NCBI RefSeq assembly: GCF_036321535.1
Contig: NC_087441.1
Location: 32,674,001-32,738,000, forward strand
DNA from: Camelus dromedarius
Lineage: Eukaryota
Reading direction: 5' to 3'
Length of the DNA: 64,000 nt
Below the pieces are notes generated by a model that was not told where the DNA came from, searched no databases, and saw only the letters and a program-made list of their open reading frames with translations. Shown piece by piece: positions 20,491 through 44,200 of the stretch. Numbering within the stretch: the stretch's first letter is position 1; each line of letters begins with the position of its first letter. The position numbers and the translations under genes were made by a program.

Positions 20491-20643
20491 NNNNNNNNNN
20501 NNNNNNNNNNNNNNNNNNNNNNNNNNNNNNNNNNNNNNNNNNNNNNNNNNNNNNNNNNNNNNNNNNNNNNNNNNNNNNNNNNNNNNNNNNNNNNNNNNNN
20601 NNNNNNNNNNNNNNNNNNNNNNNNNNNNNNNNNNNNNNNNNNN
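20491..20643. other. Assembly gap / N run (153 nt)
   Basis: Run of n. Confidence 1.
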
Positions 20644-21038: not shown

Positions 21039-21185
21039 NNNNNNNNNNNNNNNNNNNNNNNNNNNNNNNNNNNNNNNNNNNNNNNNNNNNNNNNNNNNNN
21101 NNNNNNNNNNNNNNNNNNNNNNNNNNNNNNNNNNNNNNNNNNNNNNNNNNNNNNNNNNNNNNNNNNNNNNNNNNNNNNNNNNNNN
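21039..21185. other. Assembly gap / N run (147 nt)
   Basis: Run of n. Confidence 1.
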
Positions 21186-21277: not shown

Positions 21278-21426
21278 NNNNNNNNNNNNNNNNNNNNNNN
21301 NNNNNNNNNNNNNNNNNNNNNNNNNNNNNNNNNNNNNNNNNNNNNNNNNNNNNNNNNNNNNNNNNNNNNNNNNNNNNNNNNNNNNNNNNNNNNNNNNNNN
21401 NNNNNNNNNNNNNNNNNNNNNNNNNN
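21278..21426. other. Assembly gap / N run (149 nt)
   Basis: Run of n. Confidence 1.
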
Positions 21427-23152: not shown

Positions 23153-23202
23153 CGAGCAAAATAACTTTGTTTCCGTTCCTTCTTCTCTTCCTTGGTATCC
23201 AT
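23153..23202 (-). CDS. NCOA7: Nuclear receptor coactivator 7, first coding segment (MDTKEEKKERKQSYFAR, phase-2 end); rest of CDS lies outside the window
   Basis: Minus strand reads ATG GAT ACC AAG GAA GAG AAG AAG GAA CGG AAA CAA AGT TAT TTT GCT CG|gtaagc. This matches the NCOA7 N-terminus as I recall it. Strong Kozak context (A at -3, G at +4). Missing from the ORF track because it is only 50 nt. Confidence 0.95.
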
Positions 23203-37744: not shown

Positions 37745-38099
37745 TGTTATATGGCCCGTTTGTGTCCCCCAACCCCACTCCAAATTCTTATGTTGAAAAC
37801 CTGATGCCCAAGGTGATGATATGAGGTGGGGCCTTCAGGAGGAGATAAGCTCACGGGGGCTCTGCCCTCACAGGATTAGTGCCTTCATAAAGGCGGCCCA
37901 GAGAGATCCTTCGCTCCTTCCACTACGTGAGGACACAAGTCTACCGTCTGCAACCTGGAAGAGGGCCCTCACTAGAACCCAACCAAGGCCCCCCAGTCCT
38001 GGACTTCCAGCCTCCAGAACTGTGAGCAATACATGGCTGCTGTTTATAAGCCACCTGGTCTAAGGTATTTTGTTACAGAAGCCCAAGTGGACTAAAATG
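37745..38099 (+). mobile_element. MLT1A0-type MaLR solo LTR, adjacent to/inserted in an L1ME fragment
   Basis: Full MLT1A0-like text; perfect 5-bp TSD ATTCC at 37740-37744 and 38100-38104. Confidence 0.9.
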
Positions 38100-39159
38100 A
38101 TTCCTTCCTAGAATGCTTTTTAAAGAGTTAAAGCTTGTTAAATTGAAACTACTTTAGAAGATGTTGTAATTCAAGGTATCAGAGGGTTGCTAACTAGCTG
38201 TCTCACTGGGAGCCAAGGACAGGCAAGTGCCCTGGGGGAATTACCAGGACCCAGGGCTGAGGCTCAGCTGTAAACTCCAGGGACCACAAGGGCTGAGCAG
38301 GCCCTCCCCGCAGACTGCCAGCCTGCAGTTGTGCTCCACACCACAAGGCAGGGGCTGCGCTCATCTAACGGCTGAATATTCGTTATTGTTACTCAGGACA
38401 CACCCTCAATTCCTCGCATCACCATGTTTGGGGAAACAAATCAGTAAATGTGATGTTTGTTTAGTGAGATCAGAATTACAGAAAGAAAATGGAAGTTCTC
38501 AAGGGACCTCACACCTGCACAGCAGTCTCACAAAATTTTCCTATTCTACACGGCTAATCTAGTTAGTGATCAGAATCATCCATGAGTCAGAGGATTCCAC
38601 AGGAACAGTGCTGAACAAACGCTATTCAATTCTTATTCGCCAAATCCTCTGTTAATCAGTCAACAGCAATTTATCTCATGCCAGGCACCTCGCAGTAAAA
38701 CCGAGCATCTAGGACACCCTCCGATTATATGGCTGGGAAAGAAAAATACCTCATTCACAGACTCAGGAGTCACTCCTTAGGATGGGCTACTATCTCTAGA
38801 GGGCTCATGTCATCTACCAGGTTGTTTAATGCTTCCGGTTTTTTAAGATTGACACCATAGTTGGAGGGTTTTGCATCTTTCTGTACCAATTAAAGAGGCA
38901 AACCCAGGAATGAAGGCAAAAAGGACACTCTGTTAGGTAAGGGCCATAATAAATATGAAAGGTTTTTTTAAATGCAAGTTAACACAATGTTTGAGAAAGA
39001 ATTAATAAGGTAAGGCAGGGATGTTAAAAAAAATGATATGAACAGGAGTTCTACTGAGGGAAGGAAAGGAGGTGGGGGCAGGGTTAGAAAAGGGATGAAT
39101 AGTTAAATAAAAGCTTCAACCTTGAGCTTTTTTTTGTTTTTTTTTAACCAATCATAAAA

Positions 39160-39362
39160 TGCTCTCCAAAATCATAGTTAATTTTTACTCGAAAGACAAT
39201 TTTCTCTTTATGAGAAATGCCTGTTCCCAGGATGGAAGCCTTCTATAAACTCATGGAGCCTTCCACATGAAATTTAGTACCCCAAGTAGGCTTCCATAAA
39301 GGCATTTCTCATAAAGAGATAACTGTCTTTCAAGTAAAAATTAACTATGATTTTGGCTAGCA
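39160..39362. repeat. Long inverted repeat (57-bp core arms, 54/57 identical; 77-nt spacer containing an extra 10-bp helix)
   Basis: 39166-39222 versus the reverse complement of 39300-39356, compared base by base; inner ATGGAAGCCT (39232-39241) / AGGCTTCCAT (39288-39297). Confidence 0.97.
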
Positions 39363-42300
39363 ACCTGAAGTTGACATCATACAGATGTAAGTAACTATTT
39401 ACCAGGTTAAAGTCAACTAACTTAATAAGTCAAAATACCAGAATGAAGAAAGTCTGATAGATTAACTCATGGATCTCACTCTTTTAAATTTTATGGTGAA
39501 TAAAAGAGGCTCAAGGAAGAATATCTATCTGATTTATAAAAACAAAGATGCATCAGATAAATTACTGATGTAAAAGAGGTCAGATGTGAGGGCGAGTGTG
39601 GTGAGGGTTAAGGCTAGCCCTTTAGCTAAAAATGACTTTTTTAATTAAATGGAATGATTCTCCTGTTCAGCCTAACAATAGCATACAAGGCCAGTACTCC
39701 AGAAATGACTGACTTAAATTGAATGGTTCTTACCAACCTTAAATTAGTCAGAAGTGGACATGAATTTAATAGCTAAAAAATAAGTGGATCTCAGTTTTGC
39801 AAAACTACGTAACACTGTTTTCCACTTGGCTATATAAGTTCAAATATACTAAATTTGCAATACTTGTTCAAAACATATTTAATGGAACCTATTAAACTTG
39901 TTAATCAAAATCATACTGTGTCCAGAGATCAACTCAGTAAATGTTCTCACTGATTAATTTTATGTTTTATATTTTGCATTGTTTTACAAAGGAAGTGAGT
40001 CAGCTTAAAATAATATATTCAATAAAATGGAAAAATATAATTAGATAAAAATCAGAATCAAAAATAAAACAAGGTAGAGCAGAAGCTCAAGGGAAAGTTA
40101 GAACATCAATTTTAGGTCATAGGTTTTAACAAGGTTATTAAAATTAAGTTGCAAATTTGACTCTGAGTTTCCTGGTTGCCAAATTAGAAACGGAAATATA
40201 ATCGATTACCTAATTCTAGTTTTGCATGATGAAAAAAAGACACTCAATAATTGCTCAGGGGAAGTAAAGCTTTCCTTTGACATTTAAAGCAGAATGGAAT
40301 TTCTTGCATAAGTTTTCAAACAGGAGCTGTAGAAGAAATTGCAATCTTAAATAACCACATCTCTTAAGTAACGTAACAGTAGGTTTCTTGTTACTGTTTT
40401 TTATTAATAAAATGCTTCTGTAAGAGCACAGTTTCGGGGGAGGGGGTGCAAAGGATGCAAAACAAGGGAACCGAAGTACATAGCTTCTGAAGATGTCTAG
40501 ACTCCTGGCCTAACACTTAGAATTGGTGGAAAATGGGTGGACATCATTTTGCTCAGCCAACTCTTTAAAAACATCATCTCTCTCAGTTAAGCTTCTGATC
40601 AAATTTATGAGCAGACAATTCATATTCCCTGGCATTGAATACCACTGTTGAGGGGAGATTAATACACAACAATCATTCTTCAACCGCCAGCCAGTTCCCT
40701 ATATTTGAAATTTAAGGTTAAAGAAATTTTCCTTTCTATAACTTTTAGGCAACCGTAACAATTTTGGTTCTAATATATGTGAATTGGGTGGATCCTACTG
40801 GATGTAAACAACAACAAAAATGGGCTGGGATAATAAAAAAGACAGTAAGTAACATTTAGCCAGGAAGGAAGAGAGGTTTTGGCAATAAAATCTTAGGAGA
40901 GACACAGGAAAAATAAGAGTAAATCCAGGTTTCAGGATTGCATTCCAGGGCTGCCTGTGGAGGCAGGGTGCAGGGGGCTTACTAGACAGGACCCAGGTAC
41001 TGAGTCATTCAGTCGCAGAGATGCTGCGCATTTGGATGCAAGACACGCACACAGAAAAATGCCTCTTCCATCCTGACATTAGGAACTGGTTTCAGGCCAA
41101 GAGTGCCAGTACAGTCTAAGTGCTCAACTTCTCTTTCTCAAATGAACAAATAAATGTCTATTAACTGCAACAAAGTAAAGGGTTTACTGTAACCATAGGA
41201 GAGGGCTCTTTGAGAAGTTTAAAAGGAAGAACAATGTAAATTAACTGTGCAATATCCTTGATTACAAACTTAAGATGTGTGAAATGTAATAATTTTTATT
41301 TCATGGGAGACTTTTTGCTCTGGTTGAATAAATCAGAGCATATTTTTCATAAGCTCTCTCCCACTGATGGTTCCCCCAATTTCACTACCATTTACCTAAA
41401 AATGTTATTTCCTCACCATCTAGGGAGAACCCAAGTAGGCTGGAGAAACAATAGTAATAAACTATGGCTTACTATAGTTTTATTACAAGTCTTTTGGGTA
41501 ATAAGTAGTAAAGATGGTGAAGATGTATTAAAATGACAAGAAAGAAGGAAAGAGAGGAAATAAGTGACTGGAACATTCCCAGATAATTTTTGCTAAACAA
41601 AGTGAAAAATGGTTAATACTGACTCATCAAACTTACATAATGAGAAAATAAAAACAAAATCAAAACAGTAAATATCATGGTGCAGAAAGAAAGCACATGA
41701 AACATAACACAGTTATCCTTGATTATTTCAAGATAACATAAAATTTAAAAGCAGAAAATGCACTAAATCTTCCAAATCCTGGATTTCACAACCACCCTGG
41801 TTGTCAAACTTGGAAACTGATACGTTTATATACTTAGGAAAACCCATGCAGTTTAAAATGTGTGACTACACCATGAATTGTGAATCACTTAGGATTTACA
41901 AACATTTCTAAATGCTTTATTTTCACCATTACCTGTAATAAAATACATTATAATTAGGTCAACCATAACAACTCAATTCCAAAATGAGTTAATATGTCAC
42001 CTATTAACCACATCACTGTTACCTCTGGAGTAACCTAGAATTTCCTTTAAACATGAACTGTACTTTTTTAAACTGTGTTTTAGAGTTTAATTAAAATAAG
42101 TCTTATTACCAATTAGAAAAAAATTGCAAGCTTAGAAGTGAAATTATATTAGGAGCTGAGGAGAATTACCTTATTTAATTATATATTAGACTAAGAAGGA
42201 ATAACATATGGTCCTAAAACTGACAAAATTCAACTTAAATCTTGGGATAACCAATTTTAAACTTCAATGGCCACAGGACAAATACATTTTAATCCTAAAT

Positions 42301-43079
42301 TGTCTTTAGATGAAGCTTGAAACACAGTTCATTCAACAAAAAACTAACGGGGGTCCATTATGCATCAGGCCAGGGGATTACAGGATTGAACAAGATGAGG
42401 ACTCTGTCCTCCTGGAGTTTACACCAGGTTCATTTTCCAAAGCTCTAAACCTTAATACGTTAATAAAATTGGAGCTTACAACAATTCACTTTCCAAAACT
42501 CTAAACCGTCTTGCTTAATATGAAATTTAGAAAGAATAGAGACAATCTTGCCAAAAGCTCTGATGTATGAACTTTACACTTGGGAAAGAAGAAGGAATTC
42601 ATAACCAGTTTTTCAGAAATACAAACCTTAACATCTAGTTGGAAGCCAGGCTGCGCCCGAGGCTGCCTCTGCTGGACGACTCCGTGCATCCTTCCAGCAG
42701 ATTCTCAACTCCCTACACCTGTATCAAACTTGCCAGGCTCTTAAGCACACGCCTTCACGAAAGCAGGAGGCTCCCAAGAAAGCAGCGCGAGAATACCCCA
42801 GCCTCATCTATCTCCTAAATACTGGACTTCTAGAAGGGCCTTCTCTAACTGGCCCTAAAATGCTGACTGTAAGGGTTTGAGATATCAATTTTATATATCA
42901 GCCAGCTACCTCTGAAATACACAAAAATCCACAGCGACTTCTATATGCCGCTGAAATAACGCTTTCCGTGGCTACATATTGGGAGAAAACAGGAAGAACG
43001 CATCTGTTCATCAAGCCGAAAAAATATGGTGACATATTTCCACCTGAGCTGCTGAAAATCCAACGGTCTCCCCCCTCAC

Positions 43080-44200
43080 CCCAATAATTCACACATCAAC
43101 CCGTCCTCTCCACCCTTGCGCGAACACAACCGGGCCCAGGGGGGTGGGCAAAAAAGGGTCAAGCTCTCCGTTGCCACCGCTCGATCTCCCGAACTCAAAA
43201 AGATGTTGTCAGGTTTACAGGGGCTGCGCCCAGCGCCATTAGCACACCTCCGAGTGAAGCACCGAGCTCCGGAGGGAGGCAAGTTTGGCGGGTCCTGGCC
43301 CCGGCCCCCCGCCCTCCCCAGCGGCAGGATCAGACGCGGACAGCGGCAAGGTCTGGTCCCGGCTTCACCCACCTACCTACAGGGCGGGGGCGCCGGCTCC
43401 TCGGGTCCGGGAGAAGAGGATCTGGCGCACGCATTTCTGGGAGCGGTGGCCTCTGCCGCTCAGCGCGGGGGAGAGCATCCTCCAGGGTGGGTGGAAGGAG
43501 GGGTCTAGGGAGGACCGTGCGGTGACGAGGAGCTGGGGCTGGAGGGAGGAGCGCCCAGGCGCGCCCCAGGGGACCGGCGTCCAGAGTTGGTGGACGCGGC
43601 CGCCGCCAGGACTCCTCAAGCCTCTCCTCACGCGCGGCGCCTGGCCAACCCTGCAGAAGCGCCCGCAGTCAGGACATCGGCCACGACAGGCTCCCGGGCC
43701 CGGCCGGAGGCGGGGAGCTGCGGGTGGCGCGACGCGGTGCAGAAGCCCGCCTCTAGCTCCGCCCGGCCCGCGCTACGCTCTGCGCCCCTCCGCTGCGGCG
43801 GGGGCCGGGGAGCTCGGCGGCCGGGCTCGGAGGCTCGGGCTGCAGCTGCGGCATCCTCCCCACCCAGGAGACCTCCGAGCTGGGAGGCTGGGTACCCCCG
43901 CCACCCGCCGGCGGCTGCCGCCTCCACTGCCCCGTCGCAGCCCCAGCCTGGGCCCGGCGGCTCCGCCCCGAGAGCTGCGTGCGCGGCCTCCGCAGGCCTC
44001 GGCCCTTTGTGACGCCTCCCGGGAGCGAGCTCGTTGCGACTCGGGCGGCCGGACTCCCTGTGGCGGACCCTGGGAAGGTCTTCTTACCTCGCCCCAGGCC
44101 GCATCCCCTAAAGCTGGCCCGCCGTGGCCACTACTCTTCGTGGGAAGTGAACCTTTGAGAGCAGAGCTGGAATTTGAGCGCCTCCCTGCGCTTTAAAGCC
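43080..44200 (-). promoter_or_regulatory. NCOA7: CpG island; main NCOA7 promoter / non-coding first exon region
   Basis: Abrupt switch to very GC- and CpG-rich sequence with GC boxes, ~20 kb upstream of the ATG exon. Minus-strand donor-like sites at 44088 (GAG|gtaaga), 43632 (CGC|gtgagg) and 43377 (TAG|gtaggt). Confidence 0.88.

What the first reader, a model, noticed from the sequence alone, without database searches (positions are those of the whole stretch)
39160..39362. Unassigned near-perfect 57-bp hairpin in NCOA7 intron 1 with strand-biased G-U compatibility
Seen: the left arm 39166-39222 (CCAAAATCATAGTTAATTTTTACTCGAAAGACAATTTTCTCTTTATGAGAAATGCCT) is the reverse complement of 39300-39356 at 54 of 57 positions. 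Four more pairs lie outside after a 2-nt mismatch, and a 10-bp inner helix (39232-39241/39288-39297) closes a 46-nt loop. On the + strand the three mismatches are C-A, A-C and U-U. In the minus-strand (NCOA7 sense) RNA they become G-U, U-G and A-A, so the pre-mRNA stem has a single true mismatch. I see no TG..CA, TA or 8-bp TSD signature, and the arms are far more similar to each other than neighbouring repeats appear to be to their families. Inference: a palindromic MITE homogenised by gene conversion, a recent fold-back duplication, or a selected RNA structure (ADAR substrate, hairpin small-RNA source, dsRNA-sensor ligand) in a gene linked to interferon and V-ATPase biology. As DNA it could extrude a cruciform ~4 kb downstream of the TSS.
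Basis: partly seen in the sequence, partly recalled or inferred. Interest (0 to 1): 0.8.

Follow-up and report, generated by a model that had tools for sequence, protein, structure and literature searches.

The report
Single-copy intronic palindrome, probably template-switch born
A real, very stable 203-bp DNA palindrome sits in an intron, but it has no other copies in the genome and no transposon hallmarks, so it is most likely a harmless by-product of DNA polymerase copying the opposite strand for a short stretch.

Summary
Arms 39160-39222 and 39300-39362 are 58/63 complementary, with a 54/57 core. A 13-bp inner helix closes a 40-nt loop. Folding z-scores are about -16 on both strands, and it is the only such repeat in the 64 kb. 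It is not an assembly artefact: a DNA contig of a sister species and RNA-seq contigs cover it.

It is not a recognisable MITE. It has no TSD and no canonical termini. The window holds no second copy, and none at 80% likeness or more was laid from about 2 Gb of contigs in each of two genomes. Rfam gave no mir-1302 (MER53) or mir-548 (MADE1) match, and metagenome hits were chance matches.

The G-U strand bias rests on two transitions (chance 1/4), one at a CpG, so it is not evidence of selection. RNA contigs show no A-to-G change in the hairpin.

The near-perfect outer arms surround a non-random but indel-ridden inner palindrome. This fits expansion or homogenisation of an older short inverted repeat by replication template switching, a documented mechanism. 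Function is unsupported. Orthologues beyond the sister species could not be reached, so origin and age are inferred. Low interest.

The parts
39160..39222 (.). Left arm of the palindrome (core 39166-39222; outer 4 bp 39160-39163 after a 2-nt mismatch). It holds the CpG at 39190-39191.
39300..39362 (.). Right arm, the reverse complement of the left arm at 58/63 positions (54/57 in the core 39300-39356).
39223..39231 (.). Asymmetric bulge: 9 nt on the left against 2 nt (39298-39299) on the right. It marks the break between the near-perfect outer arms and the older inner palindrome, and is a possible switch point.
39232..39244 (.). Left half of the inner 13-bp helix (one mismatch). Proposed older short inverted repeat that nucleated the fold-back.
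   Evidence: 0 of 1000 shuffles of the spacer give a helix this long
39285..39297 (.). Right half of the inner 13-bp helix.
39245..39284 (.). 40-nt loop. It contains a 5-bp mini-palindrome (39251-39255/39266-39270) centred at 39260.5, close to the axis of the whole element (39261). The rest aligns to its own reverse complement only with many gaps.
39127..39146 (.). T-rich tract (T8 G T9) 14 nt left of the palindrome. Context only: tested as the tail of a minus-strand retrocopy and not supported.
43001..44000 (.). G+C island (70% G+C), the likely promoter about 4 kb from the hairpin. Context only.
23153..23202 (-). Coding start of a minus-strand exon (ATG at 23202, GTAAGC donor after 23153). 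It places the hairpin in an upstream intron of a minus-strand gene. Context only.

Best explanation
The element is a single-copy, locus-specific palindrome made by local replication template switching (fold-back synthesis, or inverted-repeat expansion and homogenisation). An older short inverted repeat survives as the 13-bp inner helix and the small central palindrome. I infer that it let the nascent strand fold back on itself, or jump to the opposite strand. The polymerase then copied about 57-63 nt of the neighbouring sequence in reverse complement before returning to its template. That produced two initially identical arms around a pre-existing spacer. The arms have since picked up three substitutions, one of them a CpG transition. 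The event predates the split of the window's species from its sister species. Today it is most likely a neutral intronic sequence. As pre-mRNA it can fold into a roughly 76-bp interrupted duplex, and as DNA it could extrude a hairpin or cruciform, but nothing shows that either matters. Shown: the anatomy, the single-copy status, the lack of transposon hallmarks and the presence in two species. Inferred: the mechanism, the order of events and neutrality.
For: (1) It is single copy. There is no second copy in the window. At 80% likeness or more, the only other contig piece laid from about 2 Gb of DNA contigs in either species was a 35-nt chance match outside the hairpin, so such short partial matches are reported. 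Metagenome hits were 14 chance matches without extended similarity. (2) There is no TSD and no hAT, Tc1/mariner or piggyBac termini. No transposase or other Pfam domain lies in ORFs within about 3.5 kb. (3) The anatomy is two-tier. The outer arms have 5 mismatches and no indel in 63 nt. The inner part is significantly palindromic (0 of 1000 shuffles) and shares the same axis, but aligns only with six gap runs. Uniform decay of one perfect palindrome does not predict this. A recent copying event nucleated on an older short inverted repeat does. (4) The mechanism is documented. Template-switch mutations create perfect hairpin stems in one event and gave over 6,000 hairpins in primates, and the miRNAs born this way are enriched in introns (PMC10710096; PMC8794818). 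In yeast a 48-bp arm arose where the reference strain carries only 10- and 6-bp inverted repeats (PMC13100816). (5) The mismatches are what neutral decay gives: two transitions, one at a CpG, and one transversion.
Against: No outgroup sequence could be obtained, so the ancestral state (one arm only) was not observed. Arms of 57-63 nt are at the long end of reported short-range template-switch events. Dfam/RepeatMasker was not available, so an old family below 80% identity cannot be excluded as the source of the seed palindrome. The tool warns that its copy-number test drops human-like contigs.
Confidence: 0.6

Rival explanations
1. It is a copy of a palindromic non-autonomous DNA transposon (MITE) that inserted as such. 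Either it is recent, or it is ancient with its arms later homogenised.
For: The full-length palindromic layout of about 200 bp, with an imperfect core, resembles mammalian MITEs. Dfam was not available, so old families were not screened.
Against: There is no TSD and no canonical termini. No other copy at 80% or more was laid from about 2 Gb of contigs in each of two genomes, none is in the window and none was found in metagenomes. A MITE young enough to keep 95% arm identity should have near-identical siblings. An ancient MITE should have arms about 65-75% alike. Rfam models of MITE-derived miRNAs (mir-1302 from MER53, mir-548 from MADE1) gave no hit at E up to 10.
Confidence: 0.15
2. It is a selected RNA hairpin in the pre-mRNA: a lineage-specific miRNA or endo-siRNA precursor, an ADAR substrate, or a ligand for a dsRNA sensor.
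For: The sense-strand fold is very stable (-110.6 kcal/mol). The sense strand has only one true mismatch. RNA-seq contigs cover the region. The hairpin is identical in the two species, against 5 differences in 905 flanking nt. A sub-threshold Rfam hairpin hit exists (MIR9408, 37 bits).
Against: The G-U bias rests on two transitions, with probability 1/4 by chance. Zero differences in 203 nt is expected one time in three at the flanking rate. The RNA contigs match the sister species' DNA contig at every position of the hairpin they cover, so there is no consensus-level A-to-G change. The stem, about 76 bp, is far longer than the roughly 35 bp preferred for pri-miRNAs (PMC10710096). The MIR9408 score is far below its gathering score of 90. 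I recall that family as a plant one, and long perfect hairpins inflate covariance-model scores. RNA libraries can also hold DNA or unspliced intron.
Confidence: 0.08
3. It is an L1-mediated retrocopy of a structured RNA. The T-rich tract at 39127-39146 would be the poly(A) tail of a minus-strand insert.
For: A T8 G T9 tract lies 14 nt from the left arm. A 6-nt direct match (CAACCT) lies on both sides.
Against: The flank match is not significant: 569 of 2000 shuffles do as well. No source copy at 80% or more was laid from the genome contigs.
Confidence: 0.03
4. It is an assembly artefact, such as a chimeric fold-back read.
For: Palindromes are a known artefact of some library preparations.
Against: By sampled 31-mers, every word of the hairpin stretch (20 sampled) is held by DNA runs from four studies of the window's species and by one DNA run of its sister species, and every word of the 1.7-kb stretch (179 sampled) by runs of unrecorded kind from three further studies of the window's species. 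A 1805-nt DNA contig of the sister species spans flank, arm, loop, arm and flank. RNA contigs span arm, loop and arm.
Confidence: 0.01

Closest known systems
Hairpins created by template-switch mutation, and inverted-repeat expansion or homogenisation (Ripley quasi-palindrome model; Loytynoja and Goldman four-point model; PMC10710096, PMC8794818, PMC13100816)
   Same: It is a reverse-complement copy of adjacent sequence. It is single-locus and intronic. Near-perfect arms sit around a pre-existing spacer, and a short older inverted repeat is available as the nucleation site.
   Different: The arms (57-63 nt) and the spacer (77 nt) are at the upper end of what those studies report: 10-48-bp arms and spacers up to 70 bp in the yeast screen. 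The before-and-after states were not observed here.
Palindromic mammalian MITEs such as MER53 (source of mir-1302) and MADE1 (source of mir-548)
   Same: It is about 200 bp and palindromic over the whole length. It folds into a long hairpin when transcribed and lies in an intron.
   Different: It has no TSD, no family copies and no match to the Rfam models of the miRNA families derived from these MITEs. Arm identity of 95% is incompatible with an ancient insertion.
Long intronic dsRNA hairpins edited by ADAR (for example inverted Alu pairs)
   Same: A long, nearly perfect intramolecular duplex in a pre-mRNA.
   Different: It is much shorter than an Alu pair (about 300 bp) and is not made of repeats. 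The available RNA contigs show no A-to-G change.

Membership tests
MITE / non-autonomous DNA transposon | Target-site duplication flanking the element | tested here: not met
   By inspection there are no direct repeats of 2, 4 or 8 bp at either candidate boundary (39160/39362 or 39166/39356), apart from a trivial CT/CT.
MITE / non-autonomous DNA transposon | Multiple dispersed copies in the genome | tested here: not met
   No second copy in the 64-kb window. No other contig at 80% likeness or more was laid on the hairpin from about 2 Gb of contigs in each of two genomes. Copies below 80% were not testable.
MITE / non-autonomous DNA transposon | Superfamily-typical termini (hAT CAG/TAG, Tc1/mariner TA plus CAGT, piggyBac TTAA plus CCC) | tested here: not met
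   The ends read TGCTCTCC...GGCTAGCA.
MITE / non-autonomous DNA transposon | Match to a curated consensus (Dfam/Repbase) | not testable with these tools
   No repeat library is available. A remembered motif of a hAT MITE was searched in the window and not found.
MER53 (mir-1302) and MADE1 (mir-548) derived hairpins | Match to the Rfam covariance model | tested here: not met
   cmscan of 38000-40500 at E up to 10 returned only MIR9408 (37.2 bits, gathering score 90) and a chance snR13 hit. That Rfam holds these two families is from my own knowledge.
miRNA precursor | Stem of about 35 bp with an apical loop, and mature 22-nt reads | tested here: inconclusive
   The stem is about 76 bp, much longer than the preferred geometry (PMC10710096). 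Small-RNA reads could not be examined. No arm sequence appears in the literature library.
Hairpin generated by template switching / inverted-repeat expansion | Reverse-complement copy of immediately adjacent sequence, unique to the locus | tested here: met
Hairpin generated by template switching / inverted-repeat expansion | Pre-existing short quasi-palindrome at the axis | tested here: met
   The inner 13-bp helix shares the axis to within 3.5 nt, and 0 of 1000 shuffles match it. That it is older than the arms is inferred from its indel-rich surroundings.
Hairpin generated by template switching / inverted-repeat expansion | Ancestral or outgroup state lacking the second arm | not testable with these tools
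   Only the window's species and a sister species about 0.3-1.3% diverged were reachable, and both carry the hairpin.
ADAR-edited dsRNA | Clustered A-to-G differences between RNA and DNA | tested here: inconclusive
   RNA contigs X3 and X40 differ from the DNA contig of the sister species at no hairpin position they cover.
L1-mediated retrocopy | Poly(A) tail plus a 7-20-bp TSD | tested here: not met
   A T tract is present, but the flank match has p = 0.28.

The most novel reading that the evidence does not exclude
The hairpin is a lineage-specific RNA gene born in one step by template switching inside an expressed intron. It would yield small RNAs (endo-siRNA or miRNA-like), or act as an intronic dsRNA ligand for ADAR or PKR in a gene tied to innate immunity.
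Probability: 0.06. Interest if true: 0.5.

Novelty: new member of a known kind. Interest (0 to 1): 0.15.

Why it matters
The hairpin shows how a long, almost perfect stem can arise without a transposon, and such hairpins are the raw material from which new miRNAs are thought to emerge. As it stands, though, it is one more neutral intronic palindrome. It would matter only if small RNAs, editing or deep conservation were shown. For the scan, the lesson is that G-U strand asymmetry based on two transitions carries no weight.

Tried and rejected
- **Rfam:** the scan of 38000-40500 gave only a sub-threshold MIR9408 hit, which I treat as a hairpin-shape artefact.
- **Remembered motif:** a hAT MITE motif recalled from memory was searched in the window. 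No match.
- **Literature:** a search for six arm-derived RNA words found nothing. A search for the exon peptide, to confirm the gene name, also found nothing.
- **Collection scans:** Two mixed patterns on viral contigs gave 0 hits. One mixed pattern on metagenome contigs gave 14 hits. All are limited to about the pattern length, and the three with the longest extended matches, which I checked, had no inverted repeat, so I read them as chance.
- **Retrocopy idea:** the T tract plus a possible TSD was tested and the flank match was not significant.
- **Viral or transposase remnants:** no Pfam domain in flanking ORFs.
- **Orthologues through spurious ORFs in the protein collections:** the 111-aa ORF next to the hairpin is not on record. 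Of ten intronic ORFs only one, 3 kb away and on contigs of 1.3 kb or less, is on record. I dropped the route rather than spend a large homology search with a low chance of success.
- **Earlier findings of this scan:** nothing bears on this locus.

Full report
**Observation.** The repeat finder reports arms 39160-39222 and 39300-39362, 63 nt long, 92% complementary and 77 nt apart. It also reports an inner pair, 39232-39244 and 39285-39297, of 13 nt at 92%. In a position-by-position table the 57-nt core has three mismatches:
- C-A at 39190/39332
- A-C at 39199/39323
- T-T at 39202/39320

On the minus strand the first two become G-U wobble pairs and the third an A-A mismatch. A 2-nt mismatch at 39164-65/39357-58 is followed by four outer pairs.

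As RNA the + strand folds at -98.3 kcal/mol and the - strand at -110.6 kcal/mol. The z-scores are -16.0 and -16.3, and none of 200 shuffles folds as well. As DNA the value is -64.3 kcal/mol with z -15.3. No other inverted repeat of comparable quality exists in the 64-kb window.

**Context.** A 70% G+C island lies at 43001-44000. A minus-strand exon begins with ATG at 23202 and ends in a GTAAGC donor. The hairpin therefore lies in an upstream intron of a minus-strand gene, about 4 kb from the likely promoter. The encoded peptide matches my memory of the NCOA7 N-terminus. That is a recollection, not a tool result, and a literature search for the peptide found nothing.

**Not an artefact.**
- By sampled 31-mers, every word of the hairpin stretch (20 sampled) is held by DNA runs from four studies of the window's species and by one DNA run of its sister species. 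Every word of the 1.7-kb stretch (179 sampled) is held by runs of unrecorded kind from three further studies of the window's species.
- When contigs were laid on 38700-39900, a 1805-nt DNA contig of the sister species spanned the whole structure and both flanks. It had three substitutions and two single-base insertions, all outside the hairpin.
- RNA-seq contigs cover 38700-39356, 39333-39529 and 39137-39323.

**Not a recognisable transposon.**
- By inspection no target-site duplication exists at either candidate boundary. The ends (TGCTCTCC...GGCTAGCA) do not resemble hAT, Tc1/mariner or piggyBac termini.
- blastn of the element against the window finds only itself.
- At a likeness threshold of 80%, no other contig was laid on the hairpin from about 2 Gb of contigs in each of two genomes. 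The tool did report a 35-nt chance match elsewhere in the stretch, so short partial matches are within its reach.
- A MITE young enough to keep its arms 95% alike should have near-identical siblings. An ancient one should have arms only about 65-75% alike. Neither pattern fits.
It returned only a 37-bit match to MIR9408, far below that family's gathering score of 90. I recall MIR9408 as a plant family and read the hit as a hairpin-shape artefact.
- Two pattern scans of viral contigs found nothing. One scan of metagenome contigs found 14 matches limited to about the pattern length, which is roughly the number I estimated by chance. The three with the longest extended matches had no inverted repeat around them.
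- Flanking ORFs carry no Pfam domain.

**No support for selection or function.**
- The 'strand-biased G-U compatibility' rests on two transitions. Each transition gives a wobble pair on one strand or the other, so the chance that both favour the sense strand is 1/4.
- One of the two sits in a CpG (39190-39191), where the partner arm shows the expected decay product.
- The hairpin is identical in the two species, but the flanks differ at only 5 positions in 905 nt. About 1.1 differences would be expected in 203 nt, and zero occurs one time in three.
- RNA contigs of two runs match the sister species' DNA contig at every hairpin position they cover, so there is no consensus-level A-to-G editing. 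Contigs hide minority variants, and an RNA library may contain DNA or unspliced intron, so this result is weak either way.
- The stem, about 76 bp in total, is much longer than the roughly 35 bp preferred for pri-miRNA processing (PMC10710096).

**What the anatomy says.** Aligning the element to its own reverse complement shows symmetry over the whole 203 bp, in two tiers. The outer 63 nt have five mismatches and no indel. The inner 77 nt align only with six gap runs. Yet the inner part contains a 13-bp helix that no shuffle of the spacer reproduces (0 of 1000). It also holds a 5-bp central palindrome. Both inner features share the axis of the outer arms to within 3.5 nt.

A single perfect palindrome decaying uniformly would not look like this. 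The pattern is what one expects if an older short inverted repeat nucleated a fold-back, or strand switch, of the replicating polymerase. The polymerase would then have copied about 60 nt of neighbouring sequence in reverse complement. The 9-nt/2-nt bulge at 39223-39231/39298-39299 would mark the junction.

This mechanism is documented:
- Template-switch mutations create perfect stems in one event.
- They gave over 6,000 hairpins in primates, and the miRNAs born this way are enriched in introns (PMC10710096, PMC8794818).
- In yeast a 48-bp arm arose at a locus where the reference strain has only 10- and 6-bp repeats (PMC13100816).

**Age.** Arm divergence of 3/57 is roughly 4 to 20 times the divergence between the two species. 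The lower figure uses 1.3% from 31-mer sharing, and the higher uses 0.27% from substitutions in the laid contig. If neutral, the event long predates their split. The counts are tiny and this is only an order of magnitude.

**Rejected side ideas.** The T-rich tract at 39127-39146 suggested a retrocopy tail. The only flank match is a 6-mer, and 569 of 2000 shuffles do as well. No source copy was found either.

**Limits.**
- No repeat library and no mammalian genome collection were available.
- Orthologues beyond the sister species could not be fetched.
- Attempts to reach them through spurious ORFs in the protein collections failed.
- The mechanism, the polarity (which arm is the copy) and neutrality are therefore inferences.

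**Verdict.** The hairpin is real and striking to look at, but most likely an ordinary product of local template switching. It is single-copy and shared by two sister species, with no evidence of function. Interest is low. The small chance that it is a young hairpin RNA gene is stated separately.

Noticed in passing
window 38929: RNA run X3 reads C where the window and the sister-species DNA contig read T. On the minus (sense) strand this would be A-to-G. It could be a SNP of that animal or a single editing site about 230 nt from the hairpin. No matched DNA was available.
   Followed up: no
window 42310-42501 (+): A 64-aa intronic ORF is on record as a 'protein' in the large protein collection (source Logan, 4 contigs, id P0001). 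Spurious ORFs from mammalian non-coding DNA are therefore present in that collection.
   Followed up: partly
window 23153-23202 (-): A short coding exon start, ATG followed by 50 nt and a GTAAGC donor. It encodes a lysine- and glutamate-rich N-terminus that I recall as NCOA7's. The next coding exon was not found in the window by motif search.
   Followed up: partly
window 20491-20643, 21039-21185, 21278-21426: Three runs of N (449 bases in all) in an AT-rich stretch. I left them as they are.
   Followed up: no
window 43001-44000: A sharp G+C island (70% G+C, against 40% for the window), presumably the promoter and first exon of the minus-strand gene.
   Followed up: no
window 40129-40231 (+): A weak Rfam match to the yeast snoRNA snR13 (20.7 bits, E = 2). 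I take it as chance.
   Followed up: no
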